Virus record (IMG/VR): IMGVR_UViG_3300027621_000003 | Location: 230,915-294,914 of that record | Length of the DNA: 64,000 nt | Strand: one strand, 5' to 3' | Part shown: positions 29,236-63,999 of the stretch, piece after piece | Numbering within the stretch: position 1 is the stretch's first letter | How the letters are laid out: each line of letters starts with the position of its first letter | The notes under the pieces: generated by a model | What the model saw: only the letters and a program-made list of their open reading frames with translations | Told to the model about the DNA's origin: nothing | Databases searched by the model: none | Program-made: the position numbers and the translations under genes

Positions 29236-29787
29236 CTACAATTCAATCACAAACAATTCGTAACCTTCTGGTTGGTAACTCTCCAAGAATACATTCAAGT
29301 TCACCCTAACCTTATTTGGGTTATTGTAATCTAAATTTTCATTTGGACTTTTCATTACCGTCATTACTCTATAGACAATGGTGTCACCTTCTTTGTCATA
29401 ATCATTAACCATTATCAAAACTTGTGCATTACTGTTTGACCTTCTAATGATATAAAACTTAACAGGTTGTTCTAATCTTTTGGTTTGACCAGTTTTCTTG
29501 TCTTTAAGATATATAATACCATCAATGATTGGACTCATCATTGCTGTTCTGTTTATTCCAAAGGCCCTTTTAGATAATTCAGGTAATGCATCATAAAACA
29601 TTTCAATAACCTCTTCCTTCGTCATTGGTTCAATATTTTGGTATCTATCTAATCTTTTAAATGCATGGTCACCATATTCCAACACATAGTTATAACCTTT
29701 GTAATTGGTTTTAGCAAGTACCTTTGAACCCTTAACTAAACGGTCATCTTCACTAATAAGTGTTTTTATGATTGATAATAATTTCAC
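29236..29787 (-). CDS. Late hypothetical protein, possible BECR-fold domain
   Basis: GTG start after TATTTATA (29792-29799); MKLLSIIKTLISE tag; HAFKRLDRYQNI...VMTVM. Confidence 0.55.
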   Translation of the reverse strand: MKLLSIIKTLISEDDRLVKGSKVLAKTNYKGYNYVLEYGDHAFKRLDRYQNIEPMTKEEVIEMFYDALPELSKRAFGINRTAMMSPIIDGIIYLKDKKTGQTKRLEQPVKFYIIRRSNSNAQVLIMVNDYDKEGDTIVYRVMTVMKSPNENLDYNNPNKVRVNLNVFLESYQPEGYELFVIEL

Positions 29788-29807
29788 TACATATAAATAC
29801 CTACAAA

Positions 29808-29902
29808 AAGAAAAAGGGAACCGAAGTTCCCTTTTAAGGATTTCAGGGGAATTATGTTTACGATGACCGTCTTAACCTATTCCACCCCTTACTCCCATCC
29901 TC
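29808..29902 (-). ncRNA. Candidate ~95-nt structured small RNA
   Basis: Own TATCTTTG element (29907-29914), GC-rich self-complementary body, UUCG terminator; only an 8-codon ORF inside. Confidence 0.55.
29811..29835 (-). terminator. Intrinsic terminator with C(UUCG)G loop
   Basis: AAAAGGGAAC-TTCG-GTTCCCTTTTT on the minus strand. Confidence 0.9.
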
Positions 29903-29906
29903 AATA

Positions 29907-29914
29907 CAAAGATA
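29907..29914 (-). promoter_or_regulatory. Bacteroidota-type -7 promoter element (TATCTTTG)
   Basis: TAnnTTTG upstream of the candidate ncRNA. Confidence 0.6.
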
Positions 29915-29930
29915 GTGATTTTTGTTTACA

Positions 29931-30062
29931 CTACCAAACTTTTTTTTCTTTTTTTCTACTATACACTTTTTTTGACCCAACCACACGAACCACGTTTTTT
30001 CTACGTACAATCTGTGCGATGTGTCCGTTTGTCATTCCTTGTTTCCAGTCTTTGTTTTCCAT
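29931..30062 (-). CDS. Small basic protein
   Basis: Hand-translated 43 aa: MENKDWKQGMTNGHIAQIVRRKNVVRVVGSKKVYSRKKEKKVW; TATATTTG at 30081-30088. Confidence 0.7.
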   Translation of the reverse strand: MENKDWKQGMTNGHIAQIVRRKNVVRVVGSKKVYSRKKEKKVW

Positions 30063-30080
30063 GTCCGTTTGTTTGTTATA

Positions 30081-61348: not shown

Positions 61349-62035
61349 TTAGTTAACTGTTACTGCAAAATATAATCCTGTAAATCCTAAATAGGCGGCA
61401 ACATCTTCTGTTCCAGAACCAGTTGAGGTAAATGTAGTTCCTCCAGGACCTGCATTTACTGTACCACTACTAACTTTAGCATTTCCATTTATACTGATGT
61501 TACAAGTACCACCAGCAAATGTCGGAGATAACCCATTAATTATAACTTTCCAATATCCTCTAAAAATAATAGGGTCATTAGTTGTACTAGCTTGAAGGGC
61601 GCCAGTGCTGCCAGGGGCATTAACAACTCCAGTATTTGCTTGAAGATACATATACGTAATAGAATCGTCATATAATTCAACAGTAACATCAATTTCATTA
61701 TCTACGGGAAATGGTGGTGGGGGGGTAGATACTAAATTATTAACTACATCTAATGTTACTTGATAAGTAGAGTTATCATAAAAATATGTTACTCCTTTTA
61801 AATCGTCCATATCATCAGGGTTGCCAACCGCATTTGTCTCATAAATTCTATTTAAACCCGAATTTTCACCTTTTCCATACGCATTATACGAAATTGAGTT
61901 GCTTCCATTGGGTCCCGCAAAATAAGAATAAAAACTAATATCATTTAAACTAACAACTCCACTACCGGGGTATCCTCCGTTAGCTTCACCATATATATTA
62001 TTTGCTAATGCAATATTTGTTGTTGGAATTGCCAT
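61349..62035 (-). CDS. Probable virion/fibre-associated beta-rich protein
   Basis: 228 aa, G/N/T-rich, TAATG-coupled to the fibre gene. Confidence 0.55.
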   Translation of the reverse strand: MAIPTTNIALANNIYGEANGGYPGSGVVSLNDISFYSYFAGPNGSNSISYNAYGKGENSGLNRIYETNAVGNPDDMDDLKGVTYFYDNSTYQVTLDVVNNLVSTPPPPFPVDNEIDVTVELYDDSITYMYLQANTGVVNAPGSTGALQASTTNDPIIFRGYWKVIINGLSPTFAGGTCNISINGNAKVSSGTVNAGPGGTTFTSTGSGTEDVAAYLGFTGLYFAVTVN

Positions 62036-63999
62036 TACTCTTTATTAATTTGTTTTTTAAGTTCTTTTACTTCATTTGAAAGTTCTTTAATCGCTTCAAT
62101 TAATACTGCTGTTAATTTTTCGTATTTAACTGCTTTGTATCCATTATCACGAGTAGTTACAATTTCAGGGAATACTTTTTCAACTTCTTGAGCGATTACA
62201 CCAATATCATGTCCTTCATTTTCATGAATTCCTACCATTGGTATCCAATCAAATTCATATCCACCTAATTGATTTATTTTACTTAAAGCTCCTTCAATTA
62301 ATACTTTATCAGCCTTTAATCTTTCATCTGAAGAATAGAATGCTATTACATCATTAGTTGCTCTAATTAAACCTGCGGTTGTTGGTGAACTTGTACCTAC
62401 ACCCAACGCTCCTGTCAAACTAACAGTGGTACCATTATCTGTAATTGAACTATCACCAATAGTGGTTGTGCTTGTAAATTTAACAACTCTGTTGTTTGTT
62501 CCTGATACTGAAGCTCCTGATGCACCTTGTGCTCCTTGAGGTCCTCCCGCTCCTTGTGCTCCTGTTGAACCTGTACCAGTTGCTCCTTGAGCTCCTTGTG
62601 GTCCTCCAGGTCCTTGTGGTCCAAGAGCTCCTTGAGCTCCCGCTGGTCCTTGAGGTCCCAATGGTCCTGTCGCTCCTTGTGCTCCTGTTGGTCCTGTAGC
62701 TCCTTGTGGTCCTTGAGGTCCCAATGGTCCTGTCGCTCCTTGTGCTCCTGTACCTCCAACAGCTCCTTGTGCTCCTTGGAATCCTTGAGGTCCTGGAGGT
62801 CCTATTGCTCCTTGTGCTCCTACAGGTCCTGGTGCTCCTGTTGAACCAGTAGCTCCTTGTGCTCCTACAGGTCCTTGAGGTCCTAATGGTCCTACCGCTC
62901 CTTGAGCTCCTGTTGGTCCTTGTGGTCCTGCTGGTCCTTGAGGTCCCAATGGTCCTACCGCTCCTTGTGCTCCTGTTGGTCCTTGAGGTCCCAATGGTCC
63001 TACTGCTCCTTGTGCTCCTGTTGGTCCTTGTGGTCCTAATGGTCCTACCGCTCCCTGAGCTCCTGTTGCTCCTACCGCTCCTTGAGCTCCCTGAAGTCCT
63101 GGTGCTCCCTGAGGTCCTAACGCACCTTGTGCTCCCTGAGGTCCCAATGGTCCTACAGCACCTTGTGCTCCTACCGGTCCTGGTGCTCCCTGTGGTCCTA
63201 CCGCTCCTTGTGCTCCTACCGGTCCTTGTGGTCCTAATGGTCCTACCGCTCCTTGAGCTCCTGTTGGTCCTTGTGGTCCTACCGCTCCTTGAGCTCCTAC
63301 CGGTCCTGTTGGTCCTTGTGGTCCTAATGGTCCTACCGCTCCTTGAGCTCCTGTTGGTCCTTGAGGTCCCAATGGTCCTACCGCTCCTTGAGCTCCTGTT
63401 GGTCCTTGTGGTCCTACCGCTCCTTGAGCTCCTGTTGGTCCTTGTGGTCCCAATGGTCCTACTGCTCCTTGTGCTCCTGTAGCTCCTACCGCTCCCTGAG
63501 CTCCCTGAAGTCCTGGTGCTCCCTGAGGTCCTATCGCTCCTTGAGCTCCTTGTGGTCCTAACGGTCCTACCGCTCCTTGAGCTCCTACCGGTCCTGGTGC
63601 TCCCTGTGGTCCTACCGCTCCCTGAGCTCCCTGAGGTCCCAATGGTCCAGTAGCTCCTTGTGCTCCCTGAGGTCCCAATGGTCCAGTAGCTCCTTGTGCT
63701 CCCTGAGGTCCCAATGGTCCAGTTGCTCCTTGTGCTCCTGTAGCTCCTACCGCTCCCTGAGCTCCCTGAGGTCCAGTTGCTCCTTGTGCACCCTGAGGTC
63801 CTAATGGTCCTACCGCTCCCTGAGCTCCTTGAGGTCCAGTTGCTCCTTGTGCTCCAGTAACACTAATACCTGAAGAACCTGATGTTCCCGAAGAACCTGA
63901 AGAACCACTTGAACCTGAAGTTCCGCTAGTTCCTGATGAACCACTTGAACCTGATGTTCCTGAACTTCCACTTGAACCCGATGTTCCTGAAGAACCTGA
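62035..63999 (-). CDS. Collagen-like tail fibre with C-terminal peptidase S74 intramolecular chaperone (partial; start lies beyond the window)
   Basis: Frame stays open from 63714 to the window edge; Gly-X-Y repeats; SSDERLK...[12 protein letters not shown]...[14 protein letters not shown]. Confidence 0.9.
62510..63855 (-). repeat. Collagen Gly-X-Y repeat (about 150 triplets; [15 protein letters not shown])
   Basis: 9-nt periodic coding repeat with one short interruption near the C-terminal end. Confidence 0.92.
63871..63999 (-). repeat. Gly-Ser-Ser / Gly-Thr-Ser triplet repeat
   Basis: [16 protein letters not shown]... continuing to the window edge. Confidence 0.9.

What the first reader, a model, noticed from the sequence alone, without database searches (positions are those of the whole stretch)
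29808..29914. Candidate stand-alone structured small RNA between promoter and UUCG terminator
Minus strand: a perfect TATCTTTG element, then GAGGAUGGGAGUAAGGGGUGGAAUAGGUUAAGACGGUCAUCGUAAACAUAAUUCCCCUGAAAUCCUU, then a C(UUCG)G terminator. The body is GC-rich for this genome and can fold as an imperfect rod: AGGAU/AUCCU at the 5' end, AGG..GGAAU/AUUCCCCU, and ACG-gucau-CGU at the apex. It contains only an 8-codon ORF (MGVRGGIG). I do not recognise it as tRNA, SRP, 6S or tmRNA. Function unknown; possibilities are a regulatory sRNA, protein decoy or primer RNA (the primase gene is nearby).
Basis: partly seen in the sequence, partly recalled or inferred. Interest (0 to 1): 0.6.

Follow-up and report, generated by a model that had tools for sequence, protein, structure and literature searches.

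The report
New conserved small RNA of phages
A 67-nucleotide hairpin-shaped RNA with its own promoter and terminator in a 295-kb freshwater Bacteroidetes phage is real: it recurs in many lake phage contigs with compensating base changes and matches no described RNA family, but its job is still unknown.

Summary
On the minus strand a Bacteroidetes-type promoter is followed by a 67-nt body, then a 10-bp UUCG terminator. The promoter has -33 TTTG at 29938-29935 and -7 TATCTTTG at 29914-29907. It is the best-scoring site in the 295-kb genome outside the set used to build the matrix. The body runs 29902-29836 and the terminator stem 29835-12. Thirty-six copies (18 distinct) lie on freshwater phage and metagenome contigs, in four genomic contexts. 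Helices P1 and P2 keep pairing through 5 compensatory pairs and 23 G-U cells, against 3 A-C cells. A 28-nt inner run is invariant while the neighbouring gene falls to 76% identity. Contigs from lake RNA libraries cover the upstream 43-aa gene plus the body at the highest depth of the 4-kb stretch laid. There is no Rfam, tRNA or tmRNA match. The core was not found in 185,579 prokaryote genomes or in four complete related jumbo phages. It is therefore a new, accessory, phage-borne structured small RNA family. Function is not shown. My best inference is a trans-acting protein-binding RNA. The main rival is an RNA partner of the downstream 183-aa protein, whose model weakly resembles RelE/RegB RNases.

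The parts
29934..29939 (-). -33 promoter element GTTTGG (TTTG at 29938-29935). It overlaps the last codons and the stop of the upstream 43-aa ORF.
   Evidence: Sequence. The same GTTTGGTAGT.. box at the same spacing precedes a tRNA operon (genome 133211) and a leaderless gene (genome 188718).
29907..29914 (-). -7 promoter element TATCTTTG (Bacteroidetes TAnnTTTG type).
   Evidence: The position-weight matrix from 25 leaderless-gene promoters gives 26.3 bits, the best site outside the training set in the genome. It is conserved as TATCTTTG or TATATTTG in class A copies.
29902..29902 (-). Predicted transcription start (G). It lies 4 nt after the -7 box, the same spacing as the A of ATG in leaderless genes.
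   Evidence: Inference. P1 begins here in classes A, B and C. It has not been mapped experimentally.
29836..29902 (-). 67-nt RNA body (rod-like hairpin).
   Evidence: The covariance model R1 matches 36 loci at 45-102 bits.
29897..29902 (-). P1 5' strand (positions 1-6), pairing with 29836-29841 (positions 62-67).
   Evidence: 4 of 6 pairs show compensatory changes, for example A2-U66 to U-A in 5 sequences, and G3-C65 and G4-C64 to A-U through G-U.
29890..29896 (-). 5' side of the internal loop, GGGAGUA. Its AGUA (29893-29890) faces GAA (29842-29844).
   Evidence: It is invariant except position 8 in classes A-C. AGUA/GAA is the sequence consensus of the S-turn (bulged-G, sarcin-ricin/loop E) motif; this is established knowledge applied here as inference.
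29885..29889 (-). P2 5' strand (positions 14-18), pairing with 29845-29849 (positions 54-58).
   Evidence: G16-C56 changes to A-U through G-U, and several pairs show G-U variants.
29850..29877 (-). 28-nt run invariant in all 16 distinct class A-C copies (positions 26-53). It includes the predicted apical hairpin ACG-GUCAU-CGU (29870-29860).
   Evidence: The predicted pairs here never vary, so they are untested. Class D shares this run with one inserted G.
29805..29835 (-). Intrinsic terminator: 10-bp stem, UUCG loop, U-run.
   Evidence: It is conserved in all class A copies. The same 25-nt terminator occurs once more in the genome, after a capsid-like gene.
29793..29799 (-). TATTTAT gene-start signal of the downstream ORF, 5 nt before its GTG.
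   Evidence: The motif is in 71 of 173 upstream regions, 8.8-fold enriched, typically 12 nt from motif start to start codon.
29236..29787 (-). ORF183, a neighbour and possible partner. It has no family assignment, and its model gives weak RelE/RegB-like fold matches.
29931..30062 (-). 43-aa very basic ORF ('small44') with its own TATATTTG promoter at 30088-30081. Its mRNA runs into the RNA body.
   Evidence: An RNA-library contig spans 30067-29846. A small44 homologue also precedes the class B copy.

Best explanation
It is a gene for a small structured RNA carried as an accessory element by freshwater Bacteroidetes phages.

**How it is made (inferred).** Host RNA polymerase starts at G 29902 from a -33 TTTG / -7 TATCTTTG promoter and stops at the UUCG terminator. 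This gives an RNA of about 95 nt. The same sequence is also made as the tail of the upstream 43-aa gene's mRNA.

**Shape.** The 67-nt body folds into a rod. P1 closes the 5' end. An invariant asymmetric internal loop follows (GGGAGUA opposite GAA, an S-turn-like sequence). Then come P2 and an invariant inner domain of about 35 nt.

**How it works (inferred, not shown).** It acts in trans as a protein-binding RNA, that is, a decoy, inhibitor or scaffold for a phage or host protein. The protein would read the invariant loops and inner domain, while P1 and P2 only need to pair. It does not act through long antisense pairing.

**Confidence.** The figure given (0.45) is for the whole statement including the mechanism. 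That it is a real structured-RNA gene I hold at about 0.85.
For: - **Promoter and terminator.**
- **P1 starts at the predicted +1** in three classes whose upstream sequences are unrelated.
- **Covariation.** 18 distinct sequences, 96.7% of cells paired, 5 compensatory pairs, 0 of 500 shuffles reaching the score, and slid controls near zero.
- **Strand.** 23 G-U cells against 3 A-C cells show that the constraint acts on the minus-strand transcript.
- **Selection.** The body stays 94-99% identical where ORF183 DNA falls to 76-78% and small44 to 89-94%. 15 of the 18 variable columns lie in P1/P2 pairs, and positions 26-53 are invariant.
- **Independent occurrence.** Copies lie in four contexts: after small44 with ORF183, after small44 without it, before an unrelated 150-aa ORF, and beside an integrase.
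- **Dosage.** One phage carries two tandem bodies before one terminator.
- **Transcription.** RNA-library contigs of two lake samples cover 29846-30067 at the highest depth of the 4 kb laid, while other bins are empty.
- **Against antisense action.** The longest complementarity to the phage genome is 12 nt, the median of shuffles. No single-stranded stretch in the model exceeds 7 nt.
Against: - No 5' or 3' end has been mapped. Contigs cannot show them, and the RNA contig bridges small44 and the body. The RNA could therefore exist only as a 3' UTR or be processed from it.
- No binding protein has been identified.
- Predicted folding energy is no better than that of shuffles.
- The inner helices have no covariation.
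- Most class A sequences are close relatives, so the number of independent substitutions is small.
- The promoter-like box is weaker or altered in some class B and C copies, as TACCTTTA or TATATTCG.
Confidence: 0.45

Rival explanations
1. The RNA is the partner of the downstream ORF183, as an antitoxin-like inhibitor or a substrate of it. The layout resembles type III toxin-antitoxin loci: promoter, RNA, terminator, then a protein of about 180 aa.
For: - Every ORF183 homologue of 75-93% identity whose contig reaches far enough upstream is preceded by the RNA and terminator, including one in a different flanking context (L071/L069).
- The whole cassette is present or absent as a unit relative to the closest relative L003.
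- A tandem RNA repeat occurs in L075.
- A distant ORF183 homologue (L134) has a different structured RNA of about 150 nt in the same layout.
- The ORF183 model (pLDDT 65) gives its best, though weak, matches to RelE, YoeB, HigB, BrnT and CdiA-CT RNases and to T4 RegB, at Z 3-4.2.
Against: - The RNA occurs without ORF183 in classes B, C and D. The ORF downstream in class C is unrelated.
- Another distant homologue (L133) has no RNA upstream.
- ORF183 has its own TATTTAT start signal after the terminator.
- There is no ToxN/AbiQ or other defence-family match in Pfam or PADLOC.
- Fold matches are below the level the tool calls meaningful.
- The RNA is single-copy in the window.
Confidence: 0.17
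2. It is a base-pairing regulatory sRNA. A conserved loop acts as a seed against host or phage mRNAs.
For: It has its own promoter and terminator, and it shares a terminator with the upstream mRNA, as 3'-UTR-derived sRNAs with an internal promoter do. Its invariant loops could be seeds.
Against: - Complementarity to the phage genome is no better than in shuffles.
- The longest unpaired run is 7 nt.
- 28 consecutive invariant bases are more than a seed needs.
- The host genome is unknown, so host targets could not be tested.
Confidence: 0.15
3. It is a cis-acting element only. Either it is a structured 3' UTR that stabilises or terminates the small44 mRNA, or it is an attenuator or riboswitch-like leader that gates read-through into ORF183 and the primase gene.
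For: An RNA contig joins small44 and the body. Classes A and B both follow a small44 homologue. The terminator lies directly after P1.
Against: - Classes C and D have no small44.
- The closest relative has small44 and primase without the element.
- The downstream genes differ between classes, and both ORF183 and the primase gene have their own start signals.
- No alternative antiterminator pairing is evident.
- The element carries a top-scoring promoter of its own.
Confidence: 0.1
4. It is not an RNA function at all. It is a DNA-level site (recombination, replication or packaging), a selfish mobile cassette remnant, or a template for the 8-codon peptide.
For: The ruvC-primase interval is a hot spot of gene gain and loss. 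Class D lies beside an integrase. The 8-codon ORF is kept in classes A-C.
Against: - G-U cells outnumber A-C cells 23 to 3, which fits an RNA of one strand and not duplex DNA.
- Conservation and covarying pairs extend more than 35 nt beyond the mini-ORF's stop.
- Class D lacks the ATG.
- The promoter and terminator bracket the element exactly.
Confidence: 0.05

Closest known systems
Small stable RNAs of unknown function encoded by large lytic phages, for example T4 RNA C and RNA D beside its tRNA genes (from my knowledge, not checked here)
   Same: They are short, structured, phage-encoded RNAs made from their own signals in a large tRNA-rich phage genome. Here the promoter class is shared with the phage's tRNA operons.
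   Different: There is no sequence or model similarity to any described family. This RNA is not in the tRNA cluster and is not tRNA-like.
Type III toxin-antitoxin loci (ToxIN, AbiQ/antiQ, CptIN, TenpIN) and phage pseudo-ToxI decoys
   Same: The layout is promoter, structured RNA, intrinsic terminator, then a gene of about 180 aa. One relative has a tandem RNA repeat. It is carried by a phage.
   Different: The RNA unit is 67-72 nt and usually single. The protein matches no ToxN, AbiQ, CptN or TenpN model. The RNA occurs without the protein. No copy was found in prokaryote genomes that it could mimic.
3'-UTR-derived sRNAs with an internal promoter (the DapZ and MicL type in enterobacteria; from my knowledge)
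   Same: The promoter's -33 box lies in the last codons of the upstream ORF. The sRNA and the mRNA share one terminator. An RNA contig spans both.
   Different: The host clade is Bacteroidetes, where Hfq-type seed pairing is not the known rule. No target complementarity was found. The element moves independently of the upstream gene.
Orphan structured RNA motifs from comparative genomics of metagenomes and phages (Weinberg et al., PMC2864571 and PMC5737381)
   Same: It was found by conservation and covariation, lies on environmental and phage sequence, and has no known function.
   Different: It matches none of the 4227 Rfam 15 families, which include those published motifs that have been curated.
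RNAs with S-turn (bulged-G / sarcin-ricin / loop E) internal loops that serve as protein platforms, such as 5S rRNA loop E
   Same: An invariant AGUA opposite GAA lies between two helices.
   Different: The match is in sequence pattern only, and the three-dimensional motif is not shown. There is no match to 5S or other rRNA models.

Membership tests
Any Rfam 15 family (riboswitches, ribozymes, 6S, SRP, Y RNA, known sRNAs) | Score at or above the family's gathering threshold | tested here: not met
   There are no matches in the whole window. The best local sub-threshold hits (24.9 bits or less against 60 or more needed) align only the terminator. There are none in class B, C or D loci or in L134.
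tRNA / tmRNA | Cloverleaf or tmRNA architecture detectable by ARAGORN | tested here: not met
   ARAGORN finds no gene in the window. Alignment of the body to the phage's 28 tRNAs is no better than for shuffles, p about 0.5.
Bacteroidetes sigma-A type promoter | -33 TTTG and -7 TAnnTTTG at the spacing used by this genome's genes | tested here: met
   The site scores 26.3 bits, the best outside the training set in 295 kb on both strands. The same class precedes leaderless genes and tRNA operons.
Intrinsic (Rho-independent) terminator | GC-rich stem-loop followed by a U-run | tested here: met
   A 10-bp stem, UUCG loop and U-run. It is conserved in class A.
Conserved structured RNA (general) | Base pairs kept through compensatory substitutions beyond controls | tested here: met
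   5 pairs with double changes, 96.7% of cells paired, 0 of 500 shuffles reaching the covariation score, and 0-1 such pairs in slid controls. This holds for P1 and P2 only. R-scape itself was not available.
Type III toxin-antitoxin system | Antitoxin made of tandem direct RNA repeats | tested here: not met
   There is a single body in the window and in most copies. Two tandem copies occur only in L075.
Type III toxin-antitoxin system | Terminator between the RNA and the protein gene | tested here: met
Type III toxin-antitoxin system | Toxin of the ToxN/AbiQ, CptN or TenpN endoribonuclease families | tested here: not met
   ORF183 has no match at E up to 10 in PADLOC and no ToxN-type match in Pfam. 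Weak fold matches go to the RelE/RegB type instead.
Type III toxin-antitoxin system | RNA and protein genes always linked; the protein cuts and binds the RNA | tested here: not met
   Linkage fails in classes B-D and in L133. Cutting and binding are not testable with these tools.
Riboswitch / transcription attenuator | Conserved aptamer upstream of a consistent class of regulated genes, with competing terminator and antiterminator folds | tested here: not met
   The downstream genes differ in each class, and the class B copy has no co-oriented downstream gene. I saw no competing fold by inspection, but that part is inconclusive.
Toprim-domain protein (for ORF183, as suggested by the weak Pfam hit) | Conserved Glu and DxD motif; score above the Pfam threshold | tested here: not met
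   The score is 18.5 bits against a 23.1 cut-off. The DYD motif is not kept in the distant homologues P0013 and P0015.
S-turn (bulged-G) motif | AGUA opposite GAA between helices, with the characteristic non-canonical pairs | tested here: inconclusive
   The sequence pattern is present and invariant. The geometry cannot be tested here.

The most novel reading that the evidence does not exclude
The RNA is a phage counter-weapon or self-control device of a new type. Its invariant core would bind and silence an endoribonuclease. That enzyme could be the phage's own RelE/RegB-like ORF183, which would make an RNA-antitoxin pair with a toxin fold and an RNA unlike the three known type III families. 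Alternatively it could be a host defence nuclease. Copy number would then be adjustable by tandem duplication, as seen in L075.
Probability: 0.15. Interest if true: 0.85.

Novelty: new member of a known kind. Interest (0 to 1): 0.58.

Why it matters
Very few small RNAs of lytic phages have a known role, and almost none are known for phages of Bacteroidetes, a clade with unusual promoters and translation start signals. Here is a compact RNA with comparative support, a clear transcription unit and signs of expression in lakes. The phage lineage that carries it is widespread: 14 DNA runs from many studies hold it, and it also encodes its own ribosomal protein bS21. The RNA is small enough for direct tests by pull-down, structure probing and deletion. 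Its 28 invariant bases say that something reads it very precisely.

Tried and rejected
- **Rfam.** Gathering threshold on the window, and E up to 10 locally: only terminator-driven sub-threshold hits. Class B-D loci and L134: nothing.
- **tRNA and tmRNA.** ARAGORN is negative. A gapped alignment to tRNA-Ser looked suggestive but scores like shuffles. A 20-nt match in a related phage is the antisense of a tRNA-Leu 3' end and is probably chance.
- **INPHARED phage records.** No DNA match.
- **Syntenic regions of 37 related phage contigs and four complete related genomes.** No copy.
- **Prokaryote genomes.** The 18 exact core hits all lack the flanks and equal the number I estimated for chance. 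In 151 sampled Bacteroidota genomes there was one hit at chance level.
- **Primer-RNA idea.** Rejected on distribution.
- **Antisense target in the phage.** None beyond chance.
- **ORF183 as Toprim.** Below threshold, and the motif is not conserved.
- **ORF183 as DUF4258 (a recollection of mine).** No match.
- **ORF183 against the giant VWA-repeat protein P0014.** The similarity is a short strand-plus-acidic-loop pattern only.
- **ORF183 in the ESM Atlas feature search.** Chance-level scores.
- **ORF183 against PDB sequences.** Nothing.
- **ORF183 structure models.**
- **A degenerate core pattern in viral contigs.** Nothing.
- **Complex prediction** was not used. It does not take RNA, and no protein pair is claimed.

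Full report
**1. What is in the sequence**

On the minus strand the upstream gene, a RuvC-like resolvase (30731-30117; PHROG hits), ends. A 43-aa very basic ORF ('small44', 30062-29931) follows, behind its own TATATTTG box (30088-30081).

The last codons of small44 contain GTTTGG (29939-29934). Nineteen bases further lies TATCTTTG (29914-29907). Four bases after it the 67-nt body begins at 29902 and runs to 29836. The terminator abuts it directly: a 10-bp stem with a UUCG loop at 29835-29812, then a U-run.

Twelve bases after the U-run comes TATTTAT (29799-29793). Five bases later is the GTG of a 183-aa ORF (29787-29236). The DnaG-like primase (29194-28277), an exonuclease and SbcCD-like genes follow.

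So the description is accurate.

**2. The genome and its signals**

The window is the right end of a 294,914-bp phage record of 32% GC that is 98% complete. It has 28 tRNA genes and a ribosomal protein bS21 gene. This places it with the bS21-encoding jumbo phages of freshwater lakes, which are predicted to infect Bacteroidetes, mostly Flavobacteriia (PMC9723584).

I called ORFs crudely over the whole genome and looked at what precedes them. Two signals stand out.

- TA(T/A)CTTTG followed by exactly 4 nt and ATG, with TTTG about 19-20 nt upstream, starts about 26 genes. The same box precedes tRNA operons.
- TATTTAT followed by about 5 nt and ATG occurs in 71 of 173 upstream regions, an 8.8-fold enrichment.

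Intergenic hairpin-plus-U-run terminators are common and often abut the next promoter.

A matrix of 25 leaderless-gene promoters, however, scores the candidate's site at 26.3 bits. That ranks twelfth overall and is the best site outside the training set on both strands. The predicted +1, by the 4-nt rule, is G 29902, which is the first base of helix P1.

**3. Relatives**

The primase gave 58 related phage loci. In them the interval between the resolvase and primase genes is highly variable.

The closest relative (L003, primase 81% identical) has small44 followed after about 40 nt by the primase. It has no RNA, no UUCG terminator and no ORF183. The unit from promoter box to ORF183 is therefore an insertion or deletion of about 700 nt.

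ORF183 has no Pfam, PHROG or PADLOC family. The word search found homologues of 75-93% identity. Every contig of theirs that reaches far enough upstream carries the body, the terminator and TATTTAT.

One contig (L075) has two tandem bodies with a 72-nt period before a single terminator. In L071/L069 the cassette sits in different flanks.

A scan of metagenome contigs with an 18-nt piece of the invariant core returned 53 stretches. About 30 carry the flanks. With one more from the viral-contig scan they fall into four classes.

- **Class A** is like the window.
- **Class B** (L077) follows a small44 homologue of 54% identity. It has no ORF183 and a different terminator after a 30-nt spacer.
- **Class C** (five contigs) lies behind a TATATTTG-type box. 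It is followed by an extra covarying hairpin, its own terminator and an unrelated 150-aa ORF.
- **Class D** (seven contigs) shares only the inner 42 nt. It lies 3' of an operon with a tyrosine integrase.

**4. Structure**

With 8 distinct class A bodies, the rod model keeps 99.4% of cells paired. Three pairs are compensated, each with a G-U intermediate seen in another sequence.

A covariance model built from them finds 36 copies, 18 of them distinct, at 45-102 bits. On that alignment:

- 96.7% of cells pair;
- 5 pairs have changes on both sides, 4 of the 6 in P1 and one in P2;
- no shuffle of 500 reaches the covariation score;
- sliding the partners by 1-3 columns leaves 0-1 such pairs and 26-65% pairing.

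The alignment was fitted to the model, which favours it. However, it is ungapped in classes A-C, so there is little room for that bias.

G-U cells number 23 against 3 A-C cells. The constraint therefore acts on the transcript of the minus strand and not on duplex DNA.

Of 18 variable columns in classes A-C, 15 are in P1 or P2 pairs. Positions 26-53 (29877-29850) never change. The loop between P1 and P2 (GGGAGUA opposite GAA) is also fixed apart from one position. AGUA facing GAA is the sequence signature of an S-turn; this is inference only.

The inner helices P3 and P4 are predicted but never vary, so they are untested. Minimum free energies are not better than those of shuffles. Thermodynamics alone would not have found this RNA.

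Across class A the body stays 94-99% identical to the window where ORF183 DNA drops to 76-78%. The window itself carries two private changes, at 29883 and 29878. One of them breaks the predicted pair 25-50.

**5. Distribution**

- The RNA is single-copy in its own genome and absent from four complete related jumbo genomes.
- It is absent from the syntenic regions of 37 other relatives.
- The 18-nt core occurs 18 times in one genome each of 185,579 prokaryote species. That is about the number I estimated for chance, and none has the flanks.
- 151 sampled Bacteroidota genomes gave only one chance-level hit.

So it is an accessory, phage-borne element. I found no host copy that it could mimic. 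Divergent copies would have escaped the exact scan.

**6. Expression**

Fourteen DNA runs of lake and freshwater metagenomes hold the 4-kb stretch, and six RNA libraries hold parts of it.

These are assembled contigs, so they show presence only.

- In X18 one 222-nt contig with no differences covers 30067-29846. That is from 9 nt after the predicted small44 start to position 57 of the body. Its depth of 37.8 is the highest of the stretch, while many bins are empty.
- In X15 a variant strain gives depths of 31-33 over the same region. Its contig also ends at 29846, with an adapter sequence beside it.

Uneven cover argues for RNA rather than contaminating DNA. The contig joins small44 and the body, so at least some transcripts are read through from small44.

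Whether the common end at 29846 (between C57 and U58, 10 nt before the terminator stem) is a processing site, a priming bias or an assembly effect cannot be decided from contigs.

The X15 variant shows exactly the two bases (29883, 29878) that distinguish the window from the family consensus.

**7. What it is not**

- There is no Rfam match at gathering or permissive thresholds.
- There is no tRNA or tmRNA, and resemblance to phage tRNAs is at chance level.
- It is not tied to the primase gene.
- Antisense complementarity in the phage is no better than in shuffles.

**8. The neighbour ORF183**

The family scans left ORF183 open, so I used the large profile search. It added only two distant homologues and a VWA-repeat protein that matches through a short pattern.

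The weak Toprim hit is below threshold, and its DYD motif is not conserved. Invariant residues include H41, R45, R48 and N51.

A model from 9 sequences reaches pLDDT 65. Foldseek finds nothing significant. The exhaustive aligner's best rows are nearly all RelE, YoeB, HigB, BrnT, ParE, CdiA-CT RNases and T4 RegB, but only at Z 3-4.2. The tool warns that such values may reflect only a common arrangement.

One distant homologue (L134) is preceded by the same layout with a different structured RNA of about 150 nt, z -3.65. Another (L133) has no RNA upstream.

This keeps an RNA-RNase pairing alive as a rival. It fails the membership test for type III toxin-antitoxin systems on three counts: the toxin family, obligate linkage and repeat structure.

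**9. Explanation and odds**

That this is a real gene for a structured RNA I hold at about 0.85. For how it works, the evidence points to recognition of a fixed three-dimensional surface:

- 28 invariant bases including the loops;
- a fixed S-turn-like loop;
- helices that are free to change as long as they pair;
- no long single strands;
- a dosage change by tandem duplication;
- independent spread between genomes.

I therefore commit to a trans-acting protein-binding RNA, made early by host polymerase, at about 0.45. The rivals are:

| Explanation | Odds |
|---|---|
| Partner of ORF183 | 0.17 |
| Seed-pairing sRNA | 0.15 |
| Purely cis element | 0.10 |
| No RNA function | 0.05 |

**Shown:** the sequence elements, the promoter class, conservation, covariation of P1 and P2, the strand, presence in RNA libraries and the distribution.

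**Inferred:** the start and stop of the RNA, the inner fold, the S-turn, any binding partner and the timing.

**10. Novelty**

It is a new family among phage-encoded small structured RNAs and is not in Rfam 15. I searched the literature only lightly and saw nothing describing it. It is ordinary in kind and new in identity. Interest is moderate to high because it is compact, testable and sits in an abundant, uncultured phage lineage.

No alternative genetic code was used.

Noticed in passing
whole genome G000; in the window e.g. 29799-29785, 30088-30062, 29209-29192: There are two gene-start signals that leave almost no 5' leader. TA(T/A)CTTTG + 4 nt + ATG starts about 26 genes and also precedes tRNA operons. 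TATTTAT + about 5 nt + ATG occurs in 71 of 173 upstream regions. This suggests mostly leaderless mRNAs and two promoter classes: a host-type one and a phage-specific one reminiscent of T4 late TATAAATA.
   Followed up: partly
window 29236-29930 versus L003:1155-1247: The whole unit (promoter box, RNA, terminator, ORF183) is missing in the closest relative. There, small44 is followed directly by the primase gene's own upstream region. The resolvase-primase interval varies from 41 nt to 2.3 kb among 58 related contigs.
   Followed up: yes
window 29788-29835 and genome 105100-105146 (L002:1494-1540, minus strand): The same 25-nt UUCG terminator, followed by GGTATTTATATGTA, occurs twice in the genome. 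The second copy lies after a capsid-like gene. This terminator-plus-promoter module may mediate cassette shuffling, as described for T4-type phages.
   Followed up: partly
L075:506-644: There is a tandem duplication of the RNA body (two copies, 72-nt period) before one terminator. The second copy carries compensatory changes in P1 and P2.
   Followed up: yes
L134:165-395: A distant ORF183 homologue (P0015) is preceded by TTTG..TATCTTTG, then a different structured RNA of about 150 nt (z -3.65, no Rfam match), a terminator and TATTTATA. The layout is the same but the RNA is different.
   Followed up: partly
L101:2040-2110, with the integrase gene at L101:2786-4279 (minus strand): Class D copies keep only the inner 42 nt of the RNA. 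They lie in a 385-nt non-coding region 3' of an operon with a tyrosine integrase (Phage_integrase plus Arm-DNA-bind_5 domains). This could be a larger RNA or an attachment-site relic.
   Followed up: partly
window 29931-30062 (minus strand): A 43-aa lysine- and arginine-rich ORF is conserved in relatives (L003, L077) and co-transcribed with the RNA body. It has no family. It could be an RNA-binding peptide.
   Followed up: partly
window 29846: RNA-library contigs of two lake samples both end here, between C57 and U58 of the body. In one of them an Illumina adapter abuts this end. This is a possible processing site or a technical bias.
   Followed up: no
window 62035-63999 (minus strand): The jump to 50% GC at the window's end is a collagen-repeat protein with a C-terminal Peptidase_S74 (endosialidase chaperone) domain, probably a tail fibre. 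It runs off the contig end.
   Followed up: yes
genome 110318-110470 and 130612-155990 (outside the window): The phage encodes ribosomal protein bS21 and 28 tRNA genes. One of these ARAGORN could not assign (genome 138281-138359).
   Followed up: partly
L063:1440-1535 (G003): A 20-nt identity to the promoter-to-P1 junction of the candidate is the antisense of the 3' end of a tRNA-Leu(UAA) gene in a related phage. I judge it to be chance.
   Followed up: yes
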